The position numbers and the translations under genes were made by a program. DNA of 64,000 nucleotides from Podarcis filfolensis (lineage: Eukaryota), in the NCBI GenBank assembly GCA_964270895.1, contig OZ185436.1. One strand, written 5' to 3'. Of this stretch, positions 22,101-22,941 are shown piece after piece (within the stretch, counting starts at the first letter, position 1; every line of letters starts with the position of its first letter). The notes under the pieces were generated by a model. That model searched no databases and had not been told where the DNA came from. It worked only from the letters and a program-made list of their open reading frames with translations.

Positions 22101-22941
22101 GAATACTATATACATTCTTCAGCAGCTTCACTTCTTCTTCTATAACTTGTATAGCTAAACCCTTTCTTATTATCTTCCTTGTACATCTCATTGTATTTGT
22201 CTGTAATGCAGCCAACTCTGAAAATGGTCTTTAATTTCCTCATAATCTTTTAATTTCTATTTTCCTTCTTAATCTCTCAGGAATCTCTATATGTAGGCCA
22301 CGTCCCCTTTTTATACCGAGCGGTTTGAGTAACGAAGCTTCAATTGGTGATAACCACCAGGGTGCCCAAAACGTCTTTCAATAGATGTGTCCCTTTCACA
22401 ACTGACGCATCTTTTCCAGATGGTTTGGAAGTGATGTGACTTAATAGACCAGAGTTGCCTGCCCTTAGGAGGACAGAAGACCTTGAGATTCTACCCAGTG
22501 CTCAGAGCTGTTGGTATAGTAATGTGGACTATACGAGTGACAGAAAAGGGTGGATGGTGATAATGGTGGTTCTGATGGGGAACTCGAGGTTGTTTACTGC
22601 ACAAAGCTGCTGCAGTCGGGATTTGAATGTACAGGAAGGTATAATCTATGTTCATGCAGGCTAGTCTTAGGCTATCAGGGTCATGGATGAGATTAGATGC
22701 CGAATGAAAGAAGAATCTGGGATGAAACTGACTTTTCTCTTTGCTTCAACAGGAGAGCAAGGACTTGGCTTTACCAGAAGGCGCCGCTTCAGATATATCA
22801 GTCGTTCCCATTGCACCCATGGATGATTATTTCTCCTTCATCAACCGCATCCATGGCAAGCAGCTTGAAGCTGCTAAGGGCAAAGTAAAAAGTCCAACCC
22901 CCAAACCTGTCAGTGCCCAGGATCCTAGCACTTCCTCCTAA
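1015..22941 (+). CDS. PCP2: Purkinje cell protein 2 (GoLoco/GPR-motif Gi/o regulator), proposed 4 coding exons, ~201 aa
   Basis: join(1015..1143, 9416..9539, 10670..10833, 22753..22941) = 606 nt, phases 0/1/0, all GT-AG. Exon 2 encodes GoLoco 1 ([19 protein letters not shown]) and exon 3 encodes GoLoco 2 ([19 protein letters not shown]). Position next to PET100 matches mammalian synteny. Exons 2-3 are secure; exons 1 and 4 are inferred. Confidence 0.85.
2011..2125. mobile_element. Short palindromic hAT MITE; further copies at ~16960-17050, 38768-38912, 51611-51749, 53365-53455, 53772-53865, 61862-61986
   Basis: Shared core aacctgtggccctccag...actacaactcccatc...gatgatgggagttgtagtcc...atctggaggg recurs across the window. 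Confidence 0.75.
7500..7567. repeat. Fragment of an interspersed repeat family (related pieces at ~7290-7325 and ~17862-17905)
   Basis: The recurrent motif tttctccga.gaaaatagggac / gtccctggaaaatagggacac occurs three times. Confidence 0.45.
8544..8853 (-). mobile_element. RTE-BovB LINE, 5'-truncated 3' end
   Basis: Open frame [53 protein letters not shown] is the BovB ORF C-terminus; (CAA)n tail. Confidence 0.92.
9416..9539 (+). CDS. PCP2: PCP2 exon 2, GoLoco motif 1
   Basis: Acceptor ccttgttttgcag; encodes [26 protein letters not shown]...; donor A|GTGAGT. Confidence 0.95.
10670..10833 (+). CDS. PCP2: PCP2 exon 3, GoLoco motif 2
   Basis: Encodes [34 protein letters not shown]...; phase-1 acceptor, donor AAG|GTGAGA. 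Confidence 0.95.
11830..11857. repeat. (TTTG)n microsatellite
   Basis: Directly visible. Confidence 0.9.
12440..12610 (-). mobile_element. Degraded L2 3' fragment
   Basis: [14 protein letters not shown] resembles the L2 RAFSVAAPRLWNSL motif. Confidence 0.55.
13841..13890. repeat. (CTTC)n microsatellite
   Basis: Directly visible, about 12 units. Confidence 0.95.
14197..14351 (+). other. PCP2: Candidate proximal alternative terminal exon of PCP2 (AAA TGA, then short 3'UTR with AATAAA)
   Basis: Strong acceptor attttcttctttgcag, AATAAA at 14346-14351, GU/U-rich downstream element at ~14361-14382. Confidence 0.45.
15149..15184. repeat. (CA)n microsatellite (others at ~21255-21290 and 59424-59442)
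   Basis: Directly visible. Confidence 0.95.
15300..16960 (-). mobile_element. Old degraded L2 LINE, interrupted by the solo LTR
   Basis: L2 3' motif gtgccaccacagtaaaggcc (RAFTVVAP) and a decayed LDYCN-type segment near 16230-16260; the L2 sequence continues across the LTR once it is removed. Outer boundaries approximate. Confidence 0.55.
15628..16077 (-). mobile_element. Solo LTR (450 bp), Gypsy-like or ERV
   Basis: Ends TGTCAG...CTAACA (TG..CA, imperfect terminal inverted repeat), exact 5-bp TSD GTACT at 15623-15627 and 16078-16082, internal minus-strand AATAAA at 15854-15859. Confidence 0.85.
17985..18300 (+). mobile_element. Two tandem SINE/L2-tail fragments
   Basis: acctacctcacagggttgttgt...ccttgag motif at ~17985-18110 and ~18165-18300. 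Confidence 0.6.
18373..19295 (-). mobile_element. L2 LINE, 5'-truncated, with (ATT)n tail
   Basis: ORF 18575..19177 contains [13 protein letters not shown]...[10 protein letters not shown]...[24 protein letters not shown] (L2 ORF2 C-terminus); (ATT)n microsatellite tail at ~18373-18432. Confidence 0.9.
21295..22290 (-). mobile_element. L1 LINE, 5'-truncated ORF2 C-terminal part with stop codons
   Basis: Minus-strand translation [12 protein letters not shown]...EDWEKLWK...[24 protein letters not shown]...EAFLLG is a typical reptile L1 ORF2 end. Confidence 0.85.
22753..22941 (+). CDS. PCP2: PCP2 putative distal terminal coding exon ([10 protein letters not shown]...[16 protein letters not shown])
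   Basis: Branch-like CTGAC at 22728-22732, tract ttttctctttgcttcaacag, phase 0 matching exon 3. [14 protein letters not shown] resembles mammalian LSPQPLLTPQDPTA. ATTAAA at 23295-23300. Confidence 0.7.
   Translation, partial: ESKDLALPEGAASDISVVPIAPMDDYFSFINRIHGKQLEAAKGKVKSPTPKPVSAQDPSTSS

What the first reader, a model, noticed from the sequence alone, without database searches (positions are those of the whole stretch)
22753..22941. PCP2 distal exon encodes a third, degenerate GoLoco helix lacking the arginine-finger triad
Seen: [19 protein letters not shown] (22822-22878) aligns without gaps to GoLoco 1, [19 protein letters not shown] (Y/F, F, S, F/L, I/L, I/V, H/Q, G, L/M, E/D), but the D/E-Q-R triad is A-A-K. 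Established: the GoLoco N-terminal helix docks on Gai/o-GDP and the triad Arg contacts GDP to give GDI activity; mammalian PCP2 has two motifs. Inference: reptile PCP2 keeps or gained a third pseudo-GoLoco that may bind G-alpha without inhibiting nucleotide release. The exon ends in the conserved ..P.P...QDP tail, so it is probably the true last exon.
Basis: partly seen in the sequence, partly recalled or inferred. Interest (0 to 1): 0.72.

Follow-up and report, generated by a model that had tools for sequence, protein, structure and literature searches.

The report
Ancient GoLoco-like helix in PCP2's last exon
The lizard PCP2 gene has a genuine, far-downstream last exon encoding a conserved helix that looks like the front half of a G-protein-binding GoLoco motif without its catalytic arginines; the helix is not a reptile novelty, being shared by frogs, salamanders, turtles, an alligator and cod and missing from mammals and a viper.

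Summary
Window 22753-22941 is an intact 62-codon exon. Its branch point and acceptor are conserved, it is in phase with the GoLoco-2 exon that ends at 10833, and an ATTAAA signal lies about 350 bases after its stop codon.

RefSeq PCP2 models of six non-snake squamates, two turtles, an alligator, salamanders and frogs join the same two exons. The exon is under purifying selection: pN/pS is 0.07-0.14 in the core.

The interpretation needs correcting in five ways:
- **Age.** The motif (VPIxPxDDYF[ST][FL]Ix[RQ][IV]HxxxL) is ancestral, not reptile-specific. It also ends the syntenic cod PCP2 orthologue. It is absent from all mammal models and from a viper locus.
- **Triad.** The A-A-K residues are not conserved, so the conserved unit stops before the triad.
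- **Pfam.** The Pfam GoLoco model does not detect the motif (0 of 25 sequences).
- **GoLoco likeness.** Ungapped scores against the GPSM2 GoLoco 3 and 4 peptides were reached by 0 of 1000 shuffles in five of six taxa. Both support descent from a GoLoco N-terminal helix.
- **Last exon.** This is one of two alternative last exons. A conserved proximal one at 14197 encodes only Lys-stop.

No RNA data were found for this species. G-alpha binding is untested.

The parts
4169..4246 (+). Alternative first coding exon of PCP2 ([26 protein letters not shown]), donor GT follows
   Evidence: tblastn of Podarcis muralis PCP2 isoform X1 (P0021) residues 1-26, 85% identity. It also came up as an ATG...GT[AG]AG candidate.
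9416..9539 (+). PCP2 exon with GoLoco motif 1 ([19 protein letters not shown]); ends in phase 1
   Evidence: Pfam PF02188 E 1.5e-10. Sequence and splice sites read. 100% identical to the Lacerta agilis PCP2 exon.
10670..10833 (+). PCP2 exon with GoLoco motif 2 ([20 protein letters not shown]); ends in phase 0 with AAG|gtgaga
   Evidence: Pfam PF02188 E 1.5e-11. Sequence read. tblastn with five lizard PCP2 proteins.
14197..14202 (+). Start of the proximal alternative last exon: cttctttgCAG|AAA TGA (Lys-stop). It gives the '...ATKK' isoforms that lack the motif. The extent of its 3'UTR was not determined.
   Evidence: The same CAG|AAATGA with the same flanks occurs in Elgaria at L003:19670. It lies inside a 79%-identical block, 14023-14401. 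'...ATKK' ends are found in lacertid, snake and turtle RefSeq models.
22728..22752 (+). Branch-point-like CTGAC, pyrimidine tract and AG acceptor of the distal exon
   Evidence: CTGAC...TTTGCTTCAACAG|GAG is invariant in four squamates, while the intron further upstream drops to 59% identity.
22753..22941 (+). Distal terminal coding exon of PCP2 (62 codons + TAA)
   Evidence: The RefSeq PCP2 models of Hemicordylus, Elgaria, Anolis sagrei, Sphaerodactylus and Pogona join ...GATK directly to E[SN]KD.... pN/pS is 0.18-0.29.
22804..22869 (+). Conserved core [22 protein letters not shown]: predicted amphipathic helix, GoLoco-N-terminal-like, with Y and H invariant across 25 sequences
   Evidence: Alignment A2. 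pN/pS 0.07-0.14. AF2 helix 163-181 in the Elgaria orthologue with pLDDT 76-87, the most confident segment of that model. hhalign against GoLoco. Ungapped scores against GPSM2 GoLoco 3/4.
22870..22878 (+). A-A-K at the place of the GoLoco D/E-Q-R triad; not conserved between taxa
   Evidence: Alignments A2 and A3: AVT, AAT, AAR, STS, KLL, TTG and IGL at these columns.
22942..23320 (+). 3'UTR of the distal exon, with the only poly(A) signal (ATTAAA) at 23295-23300
   Evidence: The related lizard contig L001 has AATAAA at the aligned place.
24000..26520 (-). Context: PET100, tail-to-tail with PCP2 (approximate limits). Its first exon encodes MGVKLEVFR near 26500. XAB2 follows on the + strand.
   Evidence: ORF 26177-26566(-) holds MGVKLEVFR. 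The same PCP2/PET100/XAB2 order is seen in Elgaria L003 and Vipera L005. Conserved blocks lie at 24018-24549. Earlier finding s1-337745.

Best explanation
Window 22753-22941 is the distal of two alternative terminal exons of the lizard (lacertid) PCP2/L7 gene. Spliced in phase 0 to the GoLoco-2 exon, it adds 62 residues. Their conserved core (VPIxPxDDYF[ST][FL]Ix[RQ][IV]HxxxL[EDQ]) is a predicted amphipathic helix.

The core is most likely what remains of a third, C-terminal GoLoco motif that was already triad-less in the common ancestor of teleosts and tetrapods. It keeps the acidic cap and the aromatic/hydrophobic face, and the spacing to the Leu/Met at -4, that in true GoLoco motifs form the helix lying in the switch II/alpha3 groove of G-alpha-i/o. 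It has lost both arginines (-5 and 0) and the Asp-Gln that hold GDP. It therefore cannot work as a classical GDI. It has instead been kept by purifying selection as a helix-only module.

Shown: the exon, its phase, its conservation, the selection on it, the helix prediction, the statistical likeness to GoLoco N-terminal halves, the alternative short end, and absence from mammal models and a viper locus.

Inferred: GoLoco ancestry (about 0.7). Also inferred: that the helix still docks on G-alpha-i/o as a low-affinity or accessory site without inhibiting nucleotide release (about 0.3), rather than binding another partner. Use of the distal or the proximal last exon would switch this module on or off in the protein.
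For: Exon reality:
- AG acceptor, phase 0 on both sides, intact ORF, ATTAAA 354 bases after the stop.
- Acceptor and branch point invariant in four squamates.
- RefSeq PCP2 models with the identical junction in Hemicordylus, Elgaria, Anolis sagrei, Sphaerodactylus, Pogona, Rhineura, Pelodiscus, Platysternon, Alligator, Pleurodeles, Lissotriton and about ten frogs. The Lys before the junction is invariant.
- In Elgaria the exon lies 18 kb after exon 3 and 2.2 kb from PET100, the same layout as here.
- pN/pS is 0.18-0.29 for the exon and 0.07-0.14 for the core, with near-saturated synonymous sites.

Age:
- The exhaustive phmmer search found the motif at the C-terminus of Gadus macrocephalus LOC132446637 (E 1.4e-6, 48% over 25 residues).
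- That protein has 14 Pfam-matched GoLoco stretches (15 by a [DE]QR pattern count). Its gene sits between Sec1/STXBP2-like and Syf1/XAB2-like genes, which makes it the PCP2 orthologue.
- The motif is in its last coding exon.

GoLoco likeness:
This was reached by 0 of 600 column shuffles and by 2 of 400 hydrophobic-pattern-preserving shuffles.
- Ungapped BLOSUM62 scores of 38-47 against the GPSM2 GoLoco 4 peptide (EDFFSLILRSQAKRMDEQR, from PDB 4jhr/4g5q) were reached by 0 of 1000 shuffles for lizard, turtle, alligator, salamander and cod. The toad scored 29, reached by 2 of 1000.
- BLASTP of the exon against true cod GoLoco repeats gives E 0.001-0.009 in the same register. Those repeats also carry His at the Gln position.

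Helix: AF2 on the Elgaria orthologue predicts only three helices, GoLoco 1, GoLoco 2 and this motif (163-181). The motif has the highest pLDDT of the protein, 76-87.

Isoform switch: the proximal Lys-stop exon is conserved at 14197 and L003:19670. Both ends are annotated in single species: Pleurodeles isoforms X2 and X3 for the two spliced ends, and Sphaerodactylus for the motif end versus an intron read-through end.
Against: - Pfam GoLoco does not hit the exon or any of 25 motif pieces at E<=10.
- Single tails score about 0 bits against a GoLoco HMM, with shuffle p of 0.01-0.5.
- A profile of the motif finds no PDB chain at E<=10. The hhalign probability is only 40%.
- The invariant residues (Tyr, His, the upstream VPIxP) are not the GoLoco-defining ones. 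The AF2 helix runs through the place where true GoLoco motifs turn towards the nucleotide.
- Established knowledge, not tested here: loss of the triad Arg or of the preceding acidic residue abolishes GDI activity and weakens binding in AGS3, RGS14 and G18. A helix-only piece may therefore bind G-alpha poorly.
- No RNA evidence for this species. The runs that hold the exon are DNA-like, with contigs running straight across the acceptor.
- The junction evidence comes from predicted XP_ models whose RNA support I did not check.
- The lacertid models returned end in ...ATKK only.
- Fish evidence is from gadids only.
Confidence: 0.62

Rival explanations
1. The exon is real, but the motif is an independent short helical interaction motif whose likeness to the GoLoco N-terminal helix is convergent (acidic cap plus aromatic amphipathic helix). 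It binds a partner other than G-alpha. Candidates are a TPR domain, an ion-channel or scaffold protein of Purkinje or bipolar cells, or an LC3-type pocket through F-x-x-I.
For: Pfam and single-sequence HMM tests fail. The most conserved residues (Tyr, His, VPIxP) differ from those of GoLoco. The predicted helix is longer than the GoLoco helices, 19 against 13 residues. All nucleotide-contacting residues are absent in every taxon. The N-terminal halves of the GPSM2 GoLoco motifs are known to have a second binding mode, on the protein's own TPR domain; PDB 4jhr is listed and the mode itself is from my knowledge.
Against: It sits as the last of a tandem series of true GoLoco motifs, in a protein that consists of little else. 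The register-exact similarity to GPSM2 GoLoco 3/4 and to cod GoLoco repeats is far above shuffles, including shuffles that keep the hydrophobic pattern. A non-G-alpha partner is compatible with GoLoco ancestry, so only the 'convergent' part is a true rival.
Confidence: 0.27
2. A decaying pseudo-motif: a third GoLoco that lost function and is drifting, with no function of its own.
For: The triad region is unconserved. The exon is missing from mammal models and from a viper locus, and the motif is visibly eroded in Carettochelys (DNYCSLVNLSH).
Against: The core is conserved from cod to lizard, with Tyr and His invariant in 25 sequences. pN/pS is 0.07-0.14 against pS up to 0.9. A neutral 20-residue stretch would not survive that divergence (roughly 400 million years, from my knowledge).
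Confidence: 0.05
3. Not a PCP2 exon at all: a chance ORF, or part of another transcript between PCP2 and PET100.
For: There are no junction reads for this species. It lies 11.9 kb from exon 3. The lacertid RefSeq models returned lack it.
Against: Identical junctions in many RefSeq models from four tetrapod orders. Coding-type conservation and a conserved acceptor. The equally long intron in Elgaria. No other family matches the peptide.
Confidence: 0.03

Closest known systems
GoLoco/GPR motif (Pfam PF02188), especially the C-terminal GoLoco 3 and 4 of GPSM2/LGN (PDB 4jhr, 4g5q, 4g5o)
   Same: Same register of acidic cap, two aromatics, S, two aliphatics, R at +8, polar Q/H at +10, and Leu/Met followed by an acidic residue at +14/+15. 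Compare DDYFSLINRIHGRQLD with EDFFSLILRSQAKRMD. It is a predicted helix. It follows two (tetrapods) or about 15 (cod) true GoLoco motifs in the same protein.
   Different: No D/E-Q-R triad and no Arg at -5, in any taxon. No conserved C-terminal extension towards the helical domain of G-alpha. Tyr and His are invariant where GoLoco has Phe and Gln. A conserved VPIxP lies upstream. It falls below every Pfam threshold. GDI activity is therefore not expected.
Inactive second GoLoco motif of GPSM3/G18 (from my knowledge: Kimple et al. 2004, where an Ala in place of the acidic residue before Q-R abolishes GDI activity)
   Same: A naturally crippled GoLoco inside a small multi-GoLoco protein of the same GPSM family.
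   Different: The G18 motif keeps Q-R and most of the consensus and can be rescued by one substitution. The PCP2 motif lacks the whole nucleotide-contacting half and has been stable in that state since before the teleost-tetrapod split.
Partial GoLoco of Rap1GAP1a (PMC12329598)
   Same: A natural half-GoLoco produced or removed by alternative splicing. There the truncation changes nucleotide-state preference (G-alpha-o-GTP instead of GDP) rather than abolishing binding. This is a precedent for functional partial motifs.
   Different: It is the opposite half. Rap1GAP1a lacks seven N-terminal helix residues and keeps the arginine finger, whereas the PCP2 motif keeps the helix and lacks the finger.
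Other helices that bind the switch II/alpha3 groove: the GBA motif of GIV/Girdin and the KB-752 peptide (from my knowledge)
   Same: Short helix-only peptides that bind G-alpha-i in the groove used by the GoLoco helix, without an arginine finger. They show that a helix alone can suffice for binding.
   Different: The GBA consensus (hydrophobic-T-hydrophobic-x-[DE]-F-hydrophobic) is not met. The residues two and four places before the acidic pair are variable or Pro/Ala. GBA motifs act as exchange factors, and nothing here bears on that.
Mammalian PCP2/L7 C-terminal exon
   Same: It follows the GoLoco-2 exon after an invariant Lys and lies next to the 3' end of PET100 (the mammalian layout is from my knowledge). 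It shares a short QDP[ST] with squamates.
   Different: It has no DDYF...H...L helix at all (about 50 mammal models). The QDP likeness is absent from turtles, the alligator and amphibians, so exon orthology is plausible but not shown.

Membership tests
GoLoco/GPR motif (PF02188) | Match to the Pfam GoLoco HMM at or near the gathering score (25.1 bits) | tested here: not met
   No hit at E<=10 for the exon or for any of 25 orthologous motif pieces. The two true motifs of the same gene score 40.7 and 44 bits.
GoLoco/GPR motif (PF02188) | N-terminal amphipathic helix [DE][DE]-F-F-x-L-L-x-x-x-Q with Leu/Met plus an acidic residue 12-13 places after the aromatics | tested here: met
   hhalign P 2.9e-4 in that register, reached by 0 of 600 and 2 of 400 shuffles. 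Ungapped scores of 38-47 against GPSM2 GoLoco 4 were reached by 0 of 1000 shuffles in five of six taxa. Predicted helix. There are substitutions: F to Y and Q to H, both invariant.
GoLoco/GPR motif (PF02188) | [DE]-Q-R triad whose Arg reaches the GDP phosphates | tested here: not met
   A-A-K in the window. AVT, AAR, STS, KLL, TTG, KPS and IGL elsewhere, with no conservation.
GoLoco/GPR motif (PF02188) | Basic residue at -5 (R-[ML]-[DE]-[DE]-Q-R), the second arginine described for the LGN GoLoco complexes (from my knowledge) | tested here: not met
   Q or H at that column in all 25 sequences.
GoLoco/GPR motif (PF02188) | Binds G-alpha-i/o-GDP and slows GDP release | not testable with these tools
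   Needs peptide binding and GTP-gamma-S assays. No complex prediction is available here.
PCP2/L7 (GPSM4) orthologue (the gene) | Small protein with two GoLoco motifs, high identity to annotated PCP2, and synteny with PET100 and XAB2 | tested here: met
   Pfam hits. 100% and 90% identity of the exons to Lacerta and Elgaria PCP2. PET100 first exon on the - strand near 26500 and XAB2 beyond it. The same order in L003 and L005.
Terminal coding exon of PCP2 | Functional acceptor, frame continuity with the preceding exon, stop codon, poly(A) signal | tested here: met
Terminal coding exon of PCP2 | Junction 10833->22753 seen in RNA of this species | tested here: inconclusive
   No RNA run holds the stretch. 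Contigs of X1, X2 and X7 cross the acceptor unspliced, as DNA does. The junction is seen only in RefSeq models of relatives.

The most novel reading that the evidence does not exclude
Non-mammalian PCP2 carries an ancient, alternatively spliced 'arginine-less GoLoco': a helix-only module. One possibility is that it still occupies the switch II/alpha3 groove of G-alpha-i/o without locking GDP, making it a natural competitor or tether that changes how the two true GoLoco motifs act. Another is that it has been re-aimed at a different partner, such as the TPR domain of GPSM1/2. Its independent loss in mammals and snakes would then mean that the mouse L7/Pcp2 literature describes a truncated version of the ancestral protein.
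Probability: 0.3. Interest if true: 0.65.

Novelty: new variant of a known kind. Interest (0 to 1): 0.45.

Why it matters
PCP2/L7 is a classic Purkinje-cell and retinal bipolar-cell marker. Its biochemistry (GDI or exchange modulator for G-alpha-o/i) and physiology remain unsettled, and all of that work was done on the mammalian protein. This analysis shows that the ancestral vertebrate protein ended in a third, strongly conserved helix. The helix resembles the groove-binding half of a GoLoco motif but lacks everything that touches the nucleotide, and it is included or excluded by the choice between two last exons.

If it binds G-alpha, it would be a natural separation of the binding and GDI functions of GoLoco motifs, and a ready-made tool peptide. 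If it binds something else, it points to an unknown PCP2 partner. Either way it gives simple, testable peptides, and it explains why older lizard annotations describe a PCP2 gene of about 2.8 kb (PMC6792250) that misses the distal exon. The sequences themselves are already in RefSeq models, so the novelty lies in recognising the motif, not in the gene.

Tried and rejected
- **Pfam GoLoco.** No hit on the exon or on 25 orthologous pieces.
- **Home-made GoLoco HMM against single tails.** Not significant.
- **PDB profile search with the motif.** Nothing at E<=10.
- **Word search with the 62-residue exon.** Only one 58-residue ORF, because of the length window. The last word search, with the cod C-terminus, found only one more gadid-like protein.
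- **RNA evidence.** The look-up of sequencing runs returned no run on record as RNA. Read laying on 20500-23600 showed DNA-like contigs crossing the acceptor in X1, X2 and X7. One X12 contig starts at about 22749, which is uninformative.
- **Contigs L001 and L006.** The Logan ORFs P0001 and P0003 turned out to be genomic-looking contigs, not cDNA.
- **The look-up of encoding contigs.** It had no record for P0002, P0006 or P0073. The marsupial gene structure, and hence orthology of the mammalian last exon, was therefore not checked.
- **Big-search hits P0004 and P0005.** P0004 has Cys-rich CBM14 chitin-binding repeats and P0005 is a DUF1036/UIM repeat protein. Their scores are summed weak repeat matches. 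I confirmed this for P0004 and infer it for P0005, and I rejected both as relatives.
- **Other motif classes, considered from memory and rejected or left as low-probability ideas.** GBA motif: the consensus is not met. FFAT motif: position 5 is a bulky Phe/Leu. LIR motif: F-x-x-I after acidic residues fits, but such short patterns are common.
- **GPSM3.** No sequence was obtained, so the idea that the motif is the counterpart of GPSM3's third GoLoco, with matching exon phase, was not tested.
- **Literature.** No paper in the library mentions a third, pseudo or degenerate GoLoco of PCP2.
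Full report
**1. What is in the sequence**

Window 22753-22941 (+) translates without interruption to [62 protein letters not shown] followed by TAA. It is preceded by ...CTGAC...TTTGCTTCAACAG.

Upstream on the same strand lie two exons with canonical GoLoco motifs:
- 9416-9539, Pfam PF02188 E 1.5e-10.
- 10670-10833, Pfam PF02188 E 1.5e-11.

The first of these ends in phase 1 and is completed by the first two bases of the second. 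The second ends in phase 0 (AAG|gtgaga at 10833). The only poly(A) signal downstream is ATTAAA at 23295.

**2. Which gene and which animal**

Exon 2 is 100% identical to Lacerta agilis PCP2. A Podarcis-type alternative first exon lies at 4169-4246. The window is therefore from a lacertid lizard.

PET100 (first exon MGVKLEVFR, - strand, near 26500) and XAB2 follow. The order is the same in Elgaria (L003) and Vipera (L005). The MTTVEAK-type first exon of other lizards was not found in the window. Judging by the 9.3-kb first intron of Elgaria, it probably lies just upstream of the window.

**3. Is the distal exon really spliced to exon 3?**

No RNA evidence could be obtained for this species. No run on record as RNA holds the stretch. 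The contigs of three runs cross the acceptor unspliced, as genomic DNA does. The 6,000-letter limit also prevented laying both exons together.

The indirect evidence is strong:
- **Exhaustive search.** A phmmer search of 1.84 billion representatives with the 62-residue peptide returned the RefSeq protein 'Purkinje cell protein 2 homolog isoform X3' of Hemicordylus capensis. In it...NKPASGATK is followed directly by QENKDLALPE...[16 protein letters not shown]...DPSTSS.
- **Word search.** A search with that protein gave 234 PCP2 relatives. The same exon follows the same invariant Lys in Elgaria, Anolis sagrei, Sphaerodactylus, Pogona, Rhineura, two turtles (Pelodiscus, Platysternon; eroded in Carettochelys), Alligator sinensis, two salamanders and about ten frogs.
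- **Same layout in Elgaria.** There the exon lies 18.1 kb after exon 3 and 2.2 kb from PET100. The long last intron is thus a shared feature.
- **Conserved splice signals.** The branch-point-like CTGAC and TTTGCTTCAACAG|GAG are invariant in four squamates. The intron further upstream is only 59% identical.
- **Coding-type constraint.** pN/pS is 0.18-0.29 over the exon and 0.07-0.14 over codons 18-39, where synonymous differences reach 0.4-0.9 per site.

I put the probability that this is a used PCP2 exon at about 0.95.

**4. It is one of two last exons**

Many models, including the lacertid ones returned, end '...ATKK'. The corresponding exon is at window 14197 (cttctttgCAG|AAA TGA). The identical sequence occurs at L003:19670 in Elgaria, inside a 79%-identical block.

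Both ends are annotated within single species. Pleurodeles isoform X2 carries the motif and X3 ends TSKK. Frogs have motif forms and NKA/NKP/NQP forms. Sphaerodactylus has the motif form and a model that reads through into the intron. Choice of last exon therefore decides whether the protein carries the motif, and this arrangement is shared by amphibians and sauropsids.

**5. How old and how widespread**

Apart from tetrapods, the exhaustive search hit one fish protein, Gadus macrocephalus LOC132446637 (E 1.4e-6).
- It has 14 Pfam-matched GoLoco stretches (15 by a [DE]QR pattern count) and ends ...ISPDDDYFSLIERVHAAHLQ..., again without a triad.
- Its gene lies between a Sec1 (STXBP2-like) gene and a Syf1/HAT (XAB2-like) gene followed by a CAMSAP gene. 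That is the PCP2 neighbourhood.
- The motif is in its last coding exon.

The motif therefore predates the teleost-tetrapod split.

All of the roughly 50 mammal models lack the motif. None of ten snake models has it. In Vipera latastei the whole PCP2-to-PET100 interval is in hand and holds no trace by tblastn or blastn. Birds could not be judged, because PCP2 is one of the GC-rich genes missing from bird assemblies (PMC6792250). Fish evidence is so far limited to gadids.

**6. Is it a GoLoco?**

Evidence against:
- Pfam's model finds nothing.
- A home-made HMM of 14 non-redundant GoLoco motifs scores single tails near 0 bits.
- A profile of the motif finds no PDB chain.

Evidence for:
- **Profile-profile alignment.** Tyr falls on the first Phe, His on the conserved Gln, and Leu-Glu on Met-Asp. 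The score is 16.1, P 2.9e-4. None of 600 column shuffles reached it (mean 6.3, sd 1.6). Only 2 of 400 shuffles that keep the hydrophobic positions reached it.
- **True cod repeats.** BLASTP of the exon against the true cod repeats (DSFFAMMNHVHRERMDDQR, which themselves have His for Gln) gives E 0.001-0.009 in the same register.
- **GPSM2/LGN peptides.** The strongest likeness is to the C-terminal GoLoco motifs of GPSM2/LGN, whose peptides were printed by the PDB search (EDFFSLILRSQAKRMDEQR and EDFFDILVKCQGSRLDDQR). Ungapped BLOSUM62 scores against GoLoco 4 are 39 (window), 46 (Pelodiscus), 38 (Alligator), 39 (Pleurodeles) and 47 (Gadus). None of 1000 shuffles reached any of these. The toad (Bufo) scores 29, reached by 2 of 1000. 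Scores against PCP2's own two motifs are lower.

Structure prediction agrees with a helix. AlphaFold2 on the Elgaria orthologue with a 22-sequence alignment predicts a disordered protein with just three helices: GoLoco 1 (49-61), GoLoco 2 (94-106) and the third motif (163-181). The third motif is the most confident part of the model, pLDDT 76-87.

My reading is that the motif descends from a GoLoco N-terminal helix (about 0.7). It is not a member of the GoLoco family as defined. The triad, the Arg at -5 and the C-terminal extension are absent in every taxon.

**7. How it probably works**

Established for true GoLoco motifs (RGS14/G-alpha-i1 structure, summarised in PMC12329598):
- The N-terminal helix lies between switch II and alpha3.
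- The triad Arg contacts the GDP beta-phosphate.
- The C-terminus crosses to the helical domain.

The PCP2 motif keeps only the first of these elements, so classical GDI action is excluded. Two mechanisms remain:
- **(a) Groove binding.** It still docks in the groove as a weak or accessory G-alpha site without nucleotide locking. Precedents are helix-only groove binders such as KB-752 and GBA motifs (from my knowledge), and the functional half-GoLoco of Rap1GAP1a, whose truncation changes nucleotide-state preference (PMC12329598).
- **(b) A different partner.** The invariant Tyr and His and the upstream VPIxP, none of them GoLoco features, favour some re-specialisation.

I give (a) about 0.3 and (b) about 0.4 to 0.5. 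The remainder goes to combined or other roles. In both cases the proximal or distal last-exon choice would act as the on/off switch.

**8. The QDP tail**

Squamates end ...[AV]QDPSTSS and therian mammals have ...PQDP[ST]ALSF.... Turtles, the alligator, salamanders and frogs have unrelated tails.

The mammalian last exon is probably the positional counterpart. It follows the same invariant Lys and, from my knowledge of the mammalian locus, lies next to PET100. I could not fetch a marsupial locus to check the exon boundary. The four-residue match is weak evidence.

**9. Novelty and score**

The exon is already present in many RefSeq predictions, so the gene structure is not new. I found no paper in the library that mentions a third, pseudo or degenerate GoLoco or any conserved C-terminal motif of PCP2.

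New points are recognition of the motif, its age, its isoform-specific inclusion, its closest likeness to GPSM2 GoLoco 3/4, and its absence from mammals and a viper. All of these are modest in scale, and function is untested.

Noticed in passing
window 14197-14202 (block 14023-14401); L003:19670: Proximal alternative last exon of PCP2 that encodes only Lys-stop (CAG|AAA TGA). It is conserved between the lacertid and an anguid, and it explains the '...ATKK' RefSeq isoforms.
   Followed up: partly
L005:23408-26794 (Vipera latastei): The whole interval between PCP2 exon 3 and PET100 is only 3.4 kb and holds no recognisable distal exon. None of ten snake PCP2 models has the motif, which suggests loss in snakes.
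   Followed up: partly
L004:10001-19356 (Gadus macrocephalus LOC132446637): The syntenic cod PCP2 orthologue is a protein of about 1200 residues with 14 Pfam-matched GoLoco stretches (15 by a [DE]QR pattern count). These include a run of near-identical DSFFAMMNHVHRERMDDQR units, a large tandem expansion compared with two motifs in tetrapods.
   Followed up: partly
window 4169-4246: Alternative first coding exon ([26 protein letters not shown]) matching Podarcis muralis isoform X1. The MTTVEAK-type and MSAQV-type first exons of other lizards were not found in the window and probably lie upstream of it.
   Followed up: partly
window 11359-11717, 12587-12787, 13145-13429, 19463-19875, 20597-20844: Blocks of 65-79% identity between the lacertid and Elgaria inside the long last intron of PCP2. 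They may be untranslated parts of the proximal exon or regulatory elements.
   Followed up: no
window 21440-22270: Very high and uneven contig depth in all four runs, with many loose ends and short skips. This indicates a multi-copy interspersed repeat in the intron just upstream of the distal exon.
   Followed up: no
P0081 (Logan, 943-base contig): A 197-residue PCP2 product that runs from exon 3 into the intron (...ATKVRACDSWGTLCS). Similar read-through ends occur in several snake and turtle models, so intron-3 retention or an intronic poly(A) site may be a third way to end the protein.
   Followed up: no
P0002 versus P0008 (Hemicordylus capensis isoforms X3 and X2): The two isoforms differ at the distal-exon junction by one Gln (ATK-Q-ENKD versus ATK-ENKD), as expected from tandem acceptors three bases apart. 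The window has only one AG at that place (caaCAG|GAG).
   Followed up: no
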